DNA of 63,659 nucleotides, filler included, from Octopus bimaculoides (lineage: Eukaryota): assembly GCF_001194135.2 (NCBI RefSeq). It is 6 parts of 6 records of this genome, joined end to end, with 100 filler letters (N's around TTAATTAATTAA, not from the genome) between each part and the next. Parts side by side here need not be neighbours in the genome. Positions count along the whole stretch, not along the records: positions 49,565 to 53,721 come from NC_068991.1; 5 more parts are not named here. One strand, given 5' to 3'. Both the position numbers and the translations under genes were made by a program. Of the stretch, positions 51,945 through 53,721 are shown in pieces (position 1 is the stretch's first letter; each line of letters begins with the position of its first letter). The notes under the pieces are model-generated. The model was not told where the DNA came from. It worked only from the letters and a program-made list of their open reading frames with translations, and did not search any database.

Positions 51945-53721
51945 TTAATCCTCACCACACATATCCCGATACATCAACTCTTCAATATATGTCTCGGAAA
52001 CAAAATGAGGATTACACCAATAAGTAACACGTAAGCTAACATTTTCCAAATTTTCTCTAGATTCCGGAGACAACATGACGAAAAATTTATTTCCTTCCAG
52101 CTTTCCCAAATTCAGTTTTGATGTGCCTTCAGCTAACAATGTAACTGGATCAGAACCATTTCCCTCTGTTAGCATATTGCTCTTTGATACCTTAATATGA
52201 ACTTTGCCATACATACTAGTGGCTGTAATCATAATATTCCAAGCCCATTTTGGATAAGCAAAATCAAAGACTGGGTTTTCGTTAACTGACACTCTAATAC
52301 CAGAGGCTGTTCTGTTCAATGTCAATCTTCGAATATGTTTCTCTACATCACATGGTTTAATTCCCACACGTTCAAAGGCTTTAATAAAAGGGCTTAGATC
52401 TTTCCCAAGATCATAGGCAACTTTCAGCATATCACAAGCCCCAGAAGTGAAATCTGAATGAGGATGCCAATATATTTCGTTGGCGATGAGGAAAACTCGG
52501 TAAGCTTCTTTGATATCCATTTTTAATTCGTGCACAATGTAGTAAAACATAAAATTATAAATCCCACTTCCATGATGAGGATTCATGTTTTGAGTGAAGT
52601 TATCTACATGACTTATAGATTTATTGTCCAAGGATGGGTCTGCCATAAATCTGTATGATTTCTTATCTTTCACAATATAGAAGCCAATTAGCCAGTCATT
52701 TTTATCTATGTAAGCTTCAGTGACTTCCCCTGTTATATCAGAAAAAGCTTCATTCATAGATCCAGACTGGTTAAAGTAAATCAATCCAGAGTGTTGTTCT
52801 GTGAAACCATGGGCAAATTCATGTGCAACAACATCAGCGTCTGTTGAAGGATAAAAGCGTGTATGGCCATCACCAAATGTACAATATTTCCCATTCCAGT
52901 ATGAACCTTCATAATTTTCCCCGTAATGAACACGCAATATAGCTTGTTTGTTTAGTATTGAAATATTATACCATTCTTGAAACATCTGAGATACCATACT
53001 ACCATAATAGACAGCATCAAGTGCAGGAGATATGGCTCCATTGGCACTATCATTAAAACCAGCGTCACAAACATAATAAATAGGGTCTGTATTATTAGAG
53101 ACTTCCCCATAACTGTTTTGCATGTCCATAACCTTCACATAATTGTTTTCAAGGAAACACATTTTACCAACTTGAGTTACAAAAGCTTTGTGATTTTTCT
53201 CACTAAATTTGTATATTCCTGATTTTTCATTGCCACCGGAACCAGTCAGTACTCTGGAAATGGTATTTAAATTGTTATATTTCAACAGTATTTCTCCAGT
53301 GTTACCATCAATAACAAAGGTAGGCCGTTTGATAACTTTCTTATTTTCTATTCGATAATTAATATAGTATGCTAATCGAGGTTTGTTCTTTTCATCCATG
53401 AAAATTATAATTTTGCATTCTGGCTGGATACTATTTGCATAAATCTCGTCTCCCTCTGCTTTAAAAGCAATATCAAAGACATCTGATTTTGAAAGTTTTG
53501 GTTTTACATTTGTAATTTCATCTTCAATTCCTTGAATAAATGTTCCTGTTGCATCACCAGTCAAATGTCCATCTTTATCTTCTGTAACAGTTAATGAAGC
53601 ATCAAAAACAGGAACACCTAAGAACTTCTCTTGTAAGCGTAAAACTTCTGTGCCTTCAGCTGTTTTGATACGGTTTGACTCTTCAACTTCTTCATACTCT
53701 TTCAAACCAAGAAGATCTCTG
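51945..53721 (-). CDS. Thermolysin-family (M4) zinc metalloprotease, elastase/vibriolysin-like, 5'-truncated by a gap
   Basis: Uninterrupted frame of about 590 codons. It has an FTP/PepSY-like propeptide (RLQEKFLGVPVF; KPRLAYYI..RPTFVIDGNTGEIL..YNNL), a mature start like GSGGNEKSGIY, HEFAH (52809-52823), GSMNEAFSD (third Zn ligand at 52749-52751), YRFM and NPHHGSGIYN. Both elastase-type disulfide pairs are present, followed by a C-terminal extension. The frame stays open upstream of the TTG (RDLLG) into the Ns. Confidence 0.95.

What the first reader, a model, noticed from the sequence alone, without database searches (positions are those of the whole stretch)
51945..53721. Intronless bacterial-type thermolysin (M4) protease in an animal genome: candidate domesticated horizontal transfer
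Seen: a stop-free frame of about 590 codons with the M4 architecture (propeptide, HExxH + NEAFSD zinc site, catalytic His in NPHHGSG). The cysteine pairs sit where Pseudomonas elastase has its two disulfides (MCFLE..YVC and GAC..KPC). The same contig (49565-53721) carries (TA)n, (GT)n and (CA)n microsatellites like the rest of the window. The ORF is AT-rich, has no neighbouring bacterial genes, and is followed by AATAAA. Established: M4 peptidases are mainly secreted bacterial enzymes, and this sequence follows the gammaproteobacterial elastase/vibriolysin type. Inference: an anciently acquired, compositionally ameliorated gene kept intact by selection, perhaps for digestion, venom/saliva, hatching or defence. 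M4-like genes may already be known from other marine invertebrates, so novelty needs checking.
Basis: partly seen in the sequence, partly recalled or inferred. Interest (0 to 1): 0.85.

Follow-up and report, generated by a model that had tools for sequence, protein, structure and literature searches.

The report
Octopus M4 protease gene, known HGT
This is a real, intact octopus gene for a secreted zinc protease of a type otherwise found in bacteria (pseudolysin/vibriolysin), but it was already published in 2018 as "ZnMP4", one of seven such genes reported as acquired by Octopus bimaculoides from bacteria.

Summary
The reading frame is real. It lies on the minus strand at 51945-53720: 591 codons plus TAA, open at the piece edge because an assembly gap starts there. 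It encodes an M4 zinc metalloprotease of the pseudolysin/vibriolysin type, with an FTP/PepSY propeptide, HEFAH, NEAFSD, the catalytic His in NPHH and four conserved cysteines. It is 100% identical to the Octopus bimaculoides protein that NCBI names "neutral protease". The published primers for XP_014776937.1 ("ZnMP4", Liu et al. 2018) match the window exactly, and their hepatopancreas cDNA amplicon is 313/316 identical. The transfer claim and the expression are therefore already in print.

New here:
- The gene is not intronless. A 49-nt first exon lies about 6.3 kb upstream, outside the piece, with a canonical GT-AG intron inside the signal peptide. A first-exon intron in the same region also occurs in an O. 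bimaculoides paralogue, O. vulgaris, abalone and a clam.
- NCBI's 723-aa model is chimeric at its 5' end.
- The unannotated C-terminal 135 aa are a diverged bacterial PPC domain that evolves much faster (dN/dS about 0.9-1.2) than the catalytic part (about 0.3).
- The mollusc sequences, plus unnamed sequences from eukaryote-like contigs, form one group apart from about 174 other sequences, all of whose named members are bacterial (89-93% bootstrap).

Contamination is excluded. Novelty: already known.

The parts
51948..53720 (-). Coding part of the large second exon of the O. bimaculoides M4 metalloprotease gene (XP_014776937.1, 'ZnMP4'). It holds 591 codons and is open at the 5' end because an assembly gap starts at the piece edge. 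About 42 further codons of this exon and the 49-nt first exon lie outside the piece.
51945..51947 (-). TAA stop codon
53253..53720 (-). Propeptide (aa 1 to about 156 of the window ORF). The FTP motif is at aa 15-54 (53559-53678) and a PepSY-like region at aa 75-146 (53283-53498). By analogy with pseudolysin it is predicted to act as an intramolecular chaperone and inhibitor that is cut off on activation.
   Evidence: FTP 25 bits, above cut-off; PepSY 19.3 bits, below cut-off; aligned with the pro-elastase propeptide
52797..53213 (-). Peptidase_M4 N-terminal catalytic domain (aa 170-308), with Cys188 and Cys218
52809..52823 (-). HEFAH zinc-binding motif (His300, catalytic Glu301, His304)
   Evidence: invariant in all 223 aligned homologues
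52359..52790 (-). Peptidase_M4_C alpha-helical domain (aa 311-454). It carries Tyr315, the third zinc ligand Glu324 in NEAFSD (52737-52754), the catalytic His382 in NPHHGSG (52563-52583) and Cys429.
51948..52352 (-). C-terminal 135-aa beta-sandwich (aa 457-591). It is a strongly diverged bacterial pre-peptidase C-terminal (PPC) domain followed by a short helix, with conserved Cys457, Cys569 and Cys588. It evolves much faster than the rest of the protein.
   Evidence: no Pfam hit; hhalign against bacterial PPC, E=7e-5; AF2 pLDDT 85.6; best PDB fold 5sv5, a PPC domain; profile hits multi-PPC bacterial proteins, E down to 2e-18; dN/dS 0.9-1.2
52625..52940 (-). Region amplified and Sanger-sequenced from hepatopancreas cDNA by Liu et al. 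2018. Both primers match exactly and the amplicon is 313/316 identical.
51897..51902 (-). First AATAAA on the gene strand, 43 nt after the stop. It is a candidate polyadenylation signal but weak evidence in AT-rich DNA.
49565..49977 (.). Host-type microsatellites on the same contig: (TA)n 49565-49612, (TG)6 49841-49852, (GA)5 49861-49870, (AC)12 49954-49977

Best explanation
The window holds most of the large second exon of a functional nuclear gene of Octopus bimaculoides (XP_014776937.1, published as ZnMP4). It encodes a secreted zinc metalloendopeptidase zymogen of MEROPS family M4, pseudolysin/vibriolysin type.

Predicted mode of action, step by step:
- Shown: a short first exon, about 6.3 kb upstream and outside the piece, supplies the start codon and the first 16 residues of a signal peptide.
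- Inferred from homology: the FTP/PepSY propeptide folds and inhibits the enzyme and is then cleaved off near residue 156.
- Residues shown, activity inferred: the roughly 300-aa mature enzyme binds zinc through His300, His304 and Glu324. It hydrolyses peptide bonds using Glu301 and His382 with Tyr315, and is braced by two disulfides at the pseudolysin positions.
- Homology shown, role inferred: the C-terminal domain is a diverged bacterial PPC beta-sandwich. It probably serves as a substrate-binding or secretion-related module.

The family most probably entered an early mollusc from a gammaproteobacterium-like donor carrying the full pre-pro-M4-PPC architecture. It then gained a eukaryotic first exon and intron, drifted to host base composition, and has since been inherited vertically and duplicated. 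In octopus this includes a local tandem cluster. The only expression datum, cDNA from hepatopancreas, points to extracellular digestion.
For: Identity:
- 100% to NCBI 'neutral protease [O. bimaculoides]'.
- The published ZnMP4 primers match at 52920-52940(-) and 52625-52643(+), and the cDNA amplicon is 313/316 identical. The same amplicon is 91.8% identical to the O. vulgaris orthologue and 77% to the paralogue, so it is gene-specific (PMC6011040).

Enzyme family:
- Pfam M4 and M4_C are above their cut-offs. Pro-elastase 8cr3 scores E=4e-79. The nearest NCBIfam model is Legionella ProA.
- All catalytic residues, zinc ligands and cysteines are invariant.

Host integration:
- The piece lies in chromosome CM046611.1 between N gaps.
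- Exon 1 and its upstream flank are conserved with O. vulgaris.
- There is a canonical GT-AG phase-1 intron.
- The flanks carry transposable elements and a zinc-finger ORF, with no bacterial genes.
- GC3 is 27%.

Selection: dN/dS is 0.38 overall, 0.22 in the propeptide and 0.31 in the catalytic part.

Antiquity:
- Homologues occur in O. vulgaris, O. sinensis, Argonauta, Haliotis and Mactra.
- Clade A has 100% bootstrap and a topology broadly like the species tree.
- An intron at the start of the signal-peptide coding region is also found in Haliotis, Mactra and the distant octopus paralogue clade B.
- The 47-49 animal-like sequences form one group with 89-93% NJ bootstrap.

PPC domain.

Tandem paralogue about 16 kb downstream.
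Against: - The direction of transfer rests on distribution, not on a rooted tree: very many bacteria against molluscs only. My trees are neighbour-joining and unrooted or midpoint-rooted, and long-branch attraction could inflate the single animal group.
- About half of that group (clade C and some others) comes from unnamed metagenome-type contigs whose host I could not identify.
- The 5' 42 codons of exon 2 lie in an assembly gap, so an intact full-length ORF in this individual is inferred from orthologues.
- No enzymatic activity, protein-level or tissue-comparative expression data exist.
- The single RT-PCR comes from a short data paper whose animals were bought in Shenzhen.
- dN/dS near 1 in the C-terminal domain could mean that this domain is decaying rather than adapting.
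Confidence: 0.85

Rival explanations
1. Several independent bacterial-to-animal transfers: clades A, B, C and D were each acquired separately, rather than in one ancient event followed by duplication.
For: - Clades A-D are only about 30-40% identical to each other, which is no closer than to the best bacterial hits.
- A+B has only 37-42% bootstrap.
- The C-terminal regions differ. Clade B has a recognisable PPC, clade A a very diverged one, and clade C a 230-300 aa extension.
- The hosts of clade C are unknown.
Against: - The group of all animal-like sequences has 93% bootstrap with 118 taxa and 89% with 223 taxa, and it is stable under gamma-corrected distances.
- Clades A and B both have a short first exon and an intron within the signal peptide.
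- All four cysteines are invariant in the animal group but variable in bacteria.
Confidence: 0.12
2. Vertical inheritance: M4 peptidases are an old eukaryotic or metazoan gene family that survives only in molluscs after widespread loss.
For: - The animal sequences form a single group, and an unrooted tree cannot show that they are nested within bacteria.
- The gene structure is fully eukaryotic.
Against: - Among the best 120 hits of each of two whole-database searches, every named eukaryote is a mollusc, and no other animal phylum, fungus or protist appears.
- The proteins keep the complete bacterial pre-pro-M4-PPC architecture. This includes a PPC domain whose only non-mollusc relatives, found in 1.84 billion representatives, are PPC-rich proteins with typically bacterial domain sets.
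- Almost the whole protein is one exon.
- Liu et al. 2018 reached the transfer conclusion independently (PMC6011040).
Confidence: 0.04
3. Bacterial contamination or mis-assembly: the ORF belongs to a bacterium associated with the octopus and was scaffolded into the chromosome.
For: - The piece is a 4.2-kb contig bounded by N gaps on both sides.
- The ORF has no intron within the piece.
Against: - No bacterial protein exceeds 40% identity.
- The same contig carries host-type microsatellites and 21-39% GC flanks.
- An 87%-identical orthologue with the same exon 1 and conserved promoter flank sits in a gap-free O. vulgaris locus.
- Oligo-dT cDNA was amplified (PMC6011040).
- GC3 is 27%.
Confidence: 0.01
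4. A decaying, non-functional copy: a young tandem duplicate on its way to becoming a pseudogene.
For: - A truncated fragment of the same gene family, followed by a stretch that looks like a transposase remnant, lies 7 kb upstream.
- The 5' end of exon 2 is unseen.
- The C-terminal domain has dN/dS about 0.9-1.2.
- Overall dN/dS of 0.38 is moderately high.
Against: - The frame is open for 591 codons and all catalytic residues are intact.
- dN/dS is 0.2-0.3 in the propeptide and catalytic domains against an orthologue at dS 0.16.
- It is transcribed (PMC6011040).
- Exon 1 has an intact ATG and splice donor.
Confidence: 0.05

Closest known systems
Octopus bimaculoides ZnMP4 (XP_014776937.1), one of seven 'horizontally acquired Zn-metalloproteinases' of Liu et al. 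2018 (Gene, doi 10.1016/j.gene.2018.05.013; data paper PMC6011040)
   Same: It is the same gene. The published primers match exactly and the cDNA amplicon is 313/316 identical. The protein is 100% identical to the current NCBI record. The paper reports bacterial origin, codon-usage analysis and hepatopancreas cDNA.
   Different: Nothing differs biologically. Details added here that I did not see in the data paper (the main Gene paper is not held) are the signal-peptide intron and true exon 1, the chimeric current NCBI model, the PPC identity of the C-terminal domain and its fast evolution, the tandem cluster, and homologues in Haliotis, Mactra and Argonauta.
Pseudolysin (Pseudomonas aeruginosa elastase LasB) and vibriolysin/HapA-type M4 peptidases; Legionella ProA
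   Same: - The fold family is the same: Pfam M4 and M4_C.
- The FTP/PepSY propeptide, HExxH plus Glu zinc site, catalytic His and Tyr are shared, as are cysteines at the pseudolysin positions.
- The alignment with pro-elastase has E=4e-79.
- A C-terminal PPC domain is present, as in vibriolysins.
   Different: - It is only about 33-45% identical.
- It is encoded in an animal nucleus with a spliceosomal intron and a eukaryotic signal peptide.
- Its PPC domain is too diverged for Pfam to detect and carries an extra C-terminal helix with two extra conserved cysteines.
- It scores far below NCBIfam's ProA equivalog cut-off (298 against 900 bits), so it is not an orthologue of any named bacterial enzyme.
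Thermolysin / bacillolysin (Bacillus-type M4)
   Same: Same family and same catalytic machinery.
   Different: It is a much more distant relative (E=1e-23 to 1e-29, with partial alignment). Thermolysin-type enzymes lack the two disulfides.

Membership tests
MEROPS/Pfam peptidase family M4 (thermolysin family) | Both Pfam domains, Peptidase_M4 (PF01447) and Peptidase_M4_C (PF02868), above their gathering scores | tested here: met
   85.9 bits (cut-off 22.4) and 92 bits (cut-off 24.4)
MEROPS/Pfam peptidase family M4 (thermolysin family) | Zinc site HExxH plus a Glu about 20 residues downstream (NEAFSD), and the catalytic Glu, Tyr and His | tested here: met
   H300, E301, H304, Y315, E324, D328 and H382 are present. 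All but Tyr315 are invariant across 223 aligned homologues; Tyr315 is replaced in two clade C sequences.
MEROPS/Pfam peptidase family M4 (thermolysin family) | Zinc-dependent, phosphoramidon-sensitive neutral endopeptidase activity | not testable with these tools
   No biochemical data were found for any mollusc M4 protein.
Pseudolysin/vibriolysin subgroup of M4 | Closest similarity to pseudolysin/vibriolysin rather than thermolysin, and two disulfides at the pseudolysin positions | tested here: met
   Pro-elastase scores E=4e-79 against thermolysin at 3e-23 to 3e-29. Cys188/218 and Cys429/457 align with cysteines of pro-elastase. The assignment of those positions to pseudolysin's two disulfides rests on my own knowledge.
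Pseudolysin/vibriolysin subgroup of M4 | N-terminal FTP and PepSY propeptide | tested here: inconclusive
   FTP scores 25 bits (cut-off 21), so it is met. PepSY scores 19.3 bits (cut-off 24), so it is below threshold. The region still aligns with the pro-elastase propeptide.
Bacterial pre-peptidase C-terminal (PPC, PF04151) domain, for aa 457-591 | Match to the Pfam PPC model | tested here: not met
   No Pfam hit even at E<=10. Clade B paralogues give only E=0.02-0.05.
Bacterial pre-peptidase C-terminal (PPC, PF04151) domain, for aa 457-591 | Profile-level homology and fold shared with bona fide PPC domains | tested here: met
   - A profile of 12 mollusc domains hits proteins with 3-7 Pfam PPC domains at whole-library E down to 2e-18.
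- hhalign gives E=7e-5 over the full domain.
- The AF2 model (pLDDT 85.6) has its best PDB match in a collagenase PPC domain, 5sv5, and in the ColG collagen-binding domain.
Horizontally acquired, domesticated gene in an animal | Physically integrated in the host genome with host features (intron, flanks, composition) | tested here: met
Horizontally acquired, domesticated gene in an animal | Phylogeny places it within the donor group, and it is absent from the recipient's relatives | tested here: inconclusive
   Among the listed hits, the named eukaryotes are all molluscs and the nearest named relatives are Gammaproteobacteria. My NJ trees are not rooted with an outgroup, so nesting within bacteria is not formally shown.
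Horizontally acquired, domesticated gene in an animal | Expressed and under purifying selection | tested here: met
   dN/dS is 0.38 overall and 0.2-0.3 in the propeptide and catalytic parts. Expression rests on the published oligo-dT cDNA amplicon that matches this gene (PMC6011040).

The most novel reading that the evidence does not exclude
- The M4 family entered the molluscan lineage once, before cephalopods, gastropods and bivalves separated in the Cambrian.
- It acquired its signal-peptide exon and intron then, and has since radiated into at least four subfamilies.
- In the octopus subfamily, the bacterial PPC domain has been repurposed as a rapidly diversifying targeting module. This would be positive selection for prey or substrate specificity in digestive or salivary secretions.
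- The same group has also expanded into large tandem arrays in a still unidentified eukaryotic host (clade C).
Probability: 0.3. Interest if true: 0.5.

Novelty: already known. Interest (0 to 1): 0.3.

Why it matters
Bacterial-to-animal gene transfers that yield working secreted enzymes are few, so each well-documented case helps show how a foreign gene is domesticated. The steps here are capture of a promoter and signal-peptide exon, drift to host base composition, and duplication. This case is a clean example, but it was reported in 2018. The practical value of this check is threefold:
- It corrects the current NCBI gene model.
- It shows that the family reaches beyond octopus to abalone and clams with a shared intron.
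- It identifies the C-terminal domain as a fast-evolving PPC module.
These points make the function of the family (digestion, saliva or something else) easier to test.

Tried and rejected
- My first translation of 51945-53721 was out of frame. The correct frame ends at 53720.
- I first read the unnamed cephalopod-like protein P0009 as truly intronless, because a single ORF includes a Met and a hydrophobic N-terminus. I rejected this. A strong acceptor (ttctattttctccatctttttag) sits exactly at the octopus intron position, and the N-terminus diverges there from its 81%-identical relative P0010. The first 14 residues are therefore intron read-through by a prokaryotic gene caller.
- Pfam on the isolated C-terminal domain found nothing.
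- I tried to name the hosts of the unnamed homologues through cluster members and contigs. No names or taxonomy were available. The contexts look eukaryotic (hAT, reverse transcriptase/integrase), but the hosts stay unknown.
- The main Gene 2018 paper is not held in the library.
- The 2026 metazoan transfer compendium does not mention octopus in its main text.
- Four further literature searches for M4, thermolysin or vibriolysin in cephalopods or molluscs found nothing relevant.
- No maximum-likelihood tree program was available, so only NJ with bootstraps was run.
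Full report
**What is in the sequence**

The piece 49565-53721 carries a 591-codon open frame ending in TAA. It lies on the minus strand at 51945-53720.

- Pfam finds the two M4 domains well above their cut-offs. It also finds the FTP propeptide motif, and a PepSY-like stretch just below its cut-off.
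- The best solved structures are Pseudomonas pro-elastase/pseudolysin entries (E=4e-79). The alignment runs from the propeptide to the end of the catalytic domain. Thermolysin itself is far more distant (E about 1e-23 to 1e-29).
- NCBIfam's closest model is Legionella ProA, far below its equivalog cut-off.
- In window-ORF numbering, the zinc ligands are His300, His304 and Glu324. Catalytic Glu301, Tyr315 and His382 are present, as are Cys188/218 and Cys429/457. His300, Glu301, His304, Glu324, His382 and the four cysteines are invariant in all 49 animal-group homologues; Tyr315 is replaced in two clade C sequences.
- The microsatellites, the AT-richness and the downstream AATAAA hexamers are all there. 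The hexamer is common in this AT-rich DNA, so it proves little.

**Where it comes from**

The protein is 100% identical to the Octopus bimaculoides protein that NCBI names "neutral protease". The piece is the reverse complement of chromosome CM046611.1 of assembly GCA_001194135.2, and runs of N bound it on both sides. The frame is therefore cut by an assembly gap, not by a gene boundary.

**It is already published**

A full-text search found Liu et al. 2018 (Data in Brief, PMC6011040; companion paper in Gene, doi 10.1016/j.gene.2018.05.013, not held). They list twelve horizontally transferred genes in O. bimaculoides, seven of them "Zn-metalloproteinases".

- Their primers for XP_014776937.1 (ZnMP4) match the window exactly at 52920-52940 (-) and 52625-52643 (+).
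- Their Sanger-sequenced amplicon came from DNase-treated, oligo-dT-primed hepatopancreas cDNA. It is 313/316 identical to the window.
- The same amplicon is only 91.8% identical to the O. vulgaris orthologue and 77% to the nearest O. bimaculoides paralogue compared.

The window gene is therefore ZnMP4. Both its bacterial origin and its transcription have been reported.

**Gene structure: not intronless**

- The complete paralogue P0005 has two coding exons: 17 codons, a 2.8-kb intron, then 636 codons. Its donor is GGCA|GTAAGT and its acceptor TTGTTTAG|GT, in phase 1, inside the signal peptide.
- The O. vulgaris orthologue (87% identical, in a gap-free locus) has the same structure with an intron of about 13 kb.
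- For the window gene, exon 1 lies at L001 11213-11261, about 6.3 kb upstream of the piece edge. It reads ATGATGCAT...TTTGGCA|GTAAGT and encodes MMHLLVMFYSWHLLFG. Its upstream flank is nearly identical to that of O. vulgaris.
- The first 42 or so codons of exon 2 fall in the gap at L001 16465-17572.
- NCBI's 723-aa model is a patchwork. It starts in a truncated fragment of a related copy (L001 10001-10330), which is followed by a stretch that looks by eye like a mariner transposase remnant. It then adds a 23-codon exon that matches nothing in the orthologues, and joins the real exon 2. This duplicates the DLLGLKEYEEV... segment and leaves the model without a signal peptide.
- A short first exon followed by an intron in the signal-peptide region is also seen in Haliotis rufescens, in the distant octopus paralogue P0048, and in Mactra, which has one further intron. 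An unnamed cephalopod-like gene has an acceptor motif at the same place.

**Not contamination, and kept by selection**

- No bacterial protein is more than about 40% identical.
- Coding GC is 35% and GC3 is 27%, like the surrounding DNA.
- The loci around this gene and its O. vulgaris orthologue hold reverse transcriptase, RNase H and a C2H2 zinc-finger ORF, and no bacterial genes.
- Nei-Gojobori dN/dS against the O. vulgaris orthologue is 0.38 (dS 0.16). By region it is 0.22 in the propeptide, 0.31 in the catalytic part and 0.93 in the C-terminal domain. Against the paralogue the C-terminal value is 1.2.
- The excess of replacements in the C-terminal domain is significant (Fisher p=0.018 against the orthologue, p=9e-5 against the paralogue).
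- A tandem paralogue lies about 16 kb downstream on the same strand.

**The C-terminal 135 residues**

Pfam sees nothing here, even at E<=10. Four lines of evidence nevertheless identify a diverged bacterial PPC domain:

- **Position.** The domain sits where vibriolysins carry PPC. The distant octopus clade B still matches bacterial PPC profiles at E=1e-12.
- **Profile-profile alignment.** Twelve mollusc domains aligned to bacterial PPC give E=7e-5 over the full domain.
- **Fold.** An AlphaFold model (pLDDT 85.6) is a beta-sandwich. Its best PDB match is the PPC domain of a collagenase (5sv5), followed by the ColG collagen-binding domain.
- **Library search.** The mollusc profile found only 42 hits among 1.84 billion representatives. 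Seven of the eight multi-stretch hits I scanned with Pfam carry three to seven bona fide PPC domains. One of them is an M4 peptidase with three.

The animal gene thus keeps the whole bacterial pre-pro-M4-PPC architecture.

**Phylogeny**

- Trees were neighbour-joining on 413-414 columns, with 100-200 bootstraps and Kimura or gamma distances. They group the window gene with O. vulgaris (65-86%).
- The Octopus sequences (73-96%), the octopods with Argonauta (100%) and all cephalopod-like sequences (98-100%) follow. A clade joining these with Haliotis and Mactra-like sequences has 100% support.
- All animal-like sequences form one group with 93% support (118 taxa) or 89% (223 taxa). They separate from about 174 other sequences, whose named members are all bacterial. 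This group comprises clade A, the octopod clade B, a Haliotis asinina clade D, and clade C from unnamed contigs with a eukaryotic look.
- This fits one old acquisition followed by duplication. However, the trees have no outgroup and use a simple method, so neither nesting within bacteria nor a single event is formally proven.
- Every named eukaryote among the best 120 hits of each of the two whole-database searches is a mollusc.

**Most likely function and mechanism**

The gene most probably encodes a secreted zymogen. A eukaryotic signal peptide directs secretion. The FTP/PepSY propeptide acts as chaperone and inhibitor and is removed near residue 156. A roughly 300-aa zinc endopeptidase of pseudolysin type does the cleavage, and a C-terminal PPC-like module probably contributes binding or sorting. 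The sequence features are shown; the activity and the roles of the domains are inferred from homology. Hepatopancreas cDNA makes extracellular digestion the best guess. Saliva, hatching and defence remain untested.

**Verdict**

The finding is already in the literature, so it is not new. What this check adds is incremental:

- the corrected gene model;
- the conserved signal-peptide intron;
- the PPC identity of the C-terminal domain and its fast evolution;
- the tandem cluster;
- the wider molluscan distribution of the family.

Noticed in passing
L001 10001-10537 and 15090-15158 (outside the window piece; same chromosome, 7 kb upstream of the gene): The current NCBI 723-aa model for this gene is chimeric. 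It begins in a truncated copy of the propeptide region (about 90% identical to the real one), which is followed by a stretch that looks like a mariner transposase remnant. It then uses a 23-codon exon that matches nothing in the orthologues. It lacks the true signal-peptide exon at L001 11213-11261.
   Followed up: yes
L010 (CM046611.1 51,436,495-51,443,516): A tandem paralogue (P0011; 77% identical over the 58% of the query it covers) lies about 16 kb downstream on the same strand. Directly beside it is a 365-aa ORF with a PIF1 helicase domain, possibly a Helitron-type element that could have helped the duplication.
   Followed up: partly
L006, L005 and proteins P0022-P0035, P0128-P0141: A large clade of M4 genes comes only from unnamed ENA metagenome-style contigs up to several Mb long. 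Up to five copies sit on one 1.19-Mb contig, next to hAT transposase and retrotransposon ORFs. Each carries a 230-300 aa C-terminal extension. The contigs look eukaryotic, but the host could not be identified.
   Followed up: partly
L004 10001-10045 (protein P0009): The first 14 residues of this database protein are intron read-through called by a prokaryotic gene finder. A strong splice acceptor sits at the position of the octopus signal-peptide intron.
   Followed up: yes
window 50326-50547: Two imperfect direct repeats lie about 120 bp apart (50326-50384 and 50440-50504). An inverted partner of their 3' part lies at 50521-50547. This looks like fragments of a small non-autonomous repeat element in the 3' flank.
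   Followed up: no
window 51594-51635: A 21-bp tandem duplication (GTCACCAGTAAATCTAAAACT x2, 90% identical) lies about 310 nt downstream of the stop codon, possibly within the 3' UTR.
   Followed up: no
window 49822-49985: A (TG)n tract and an (AC)n tract about 100 bp apart form an imperfect inverted repeat around a GA-rich stretch. This is probably just two microsatellites.
   Followed up: no
PMC6011040, methods: The animals used for the published RT-PCR were bought in Shenzhen, China. Yet the ZnMP4 amplicon is 99.1% identical to the Californian O. bimaculoides reference and only 91.8% to O. vulgaris. The species identity of that material is therefore curious.
   Followed up: partly
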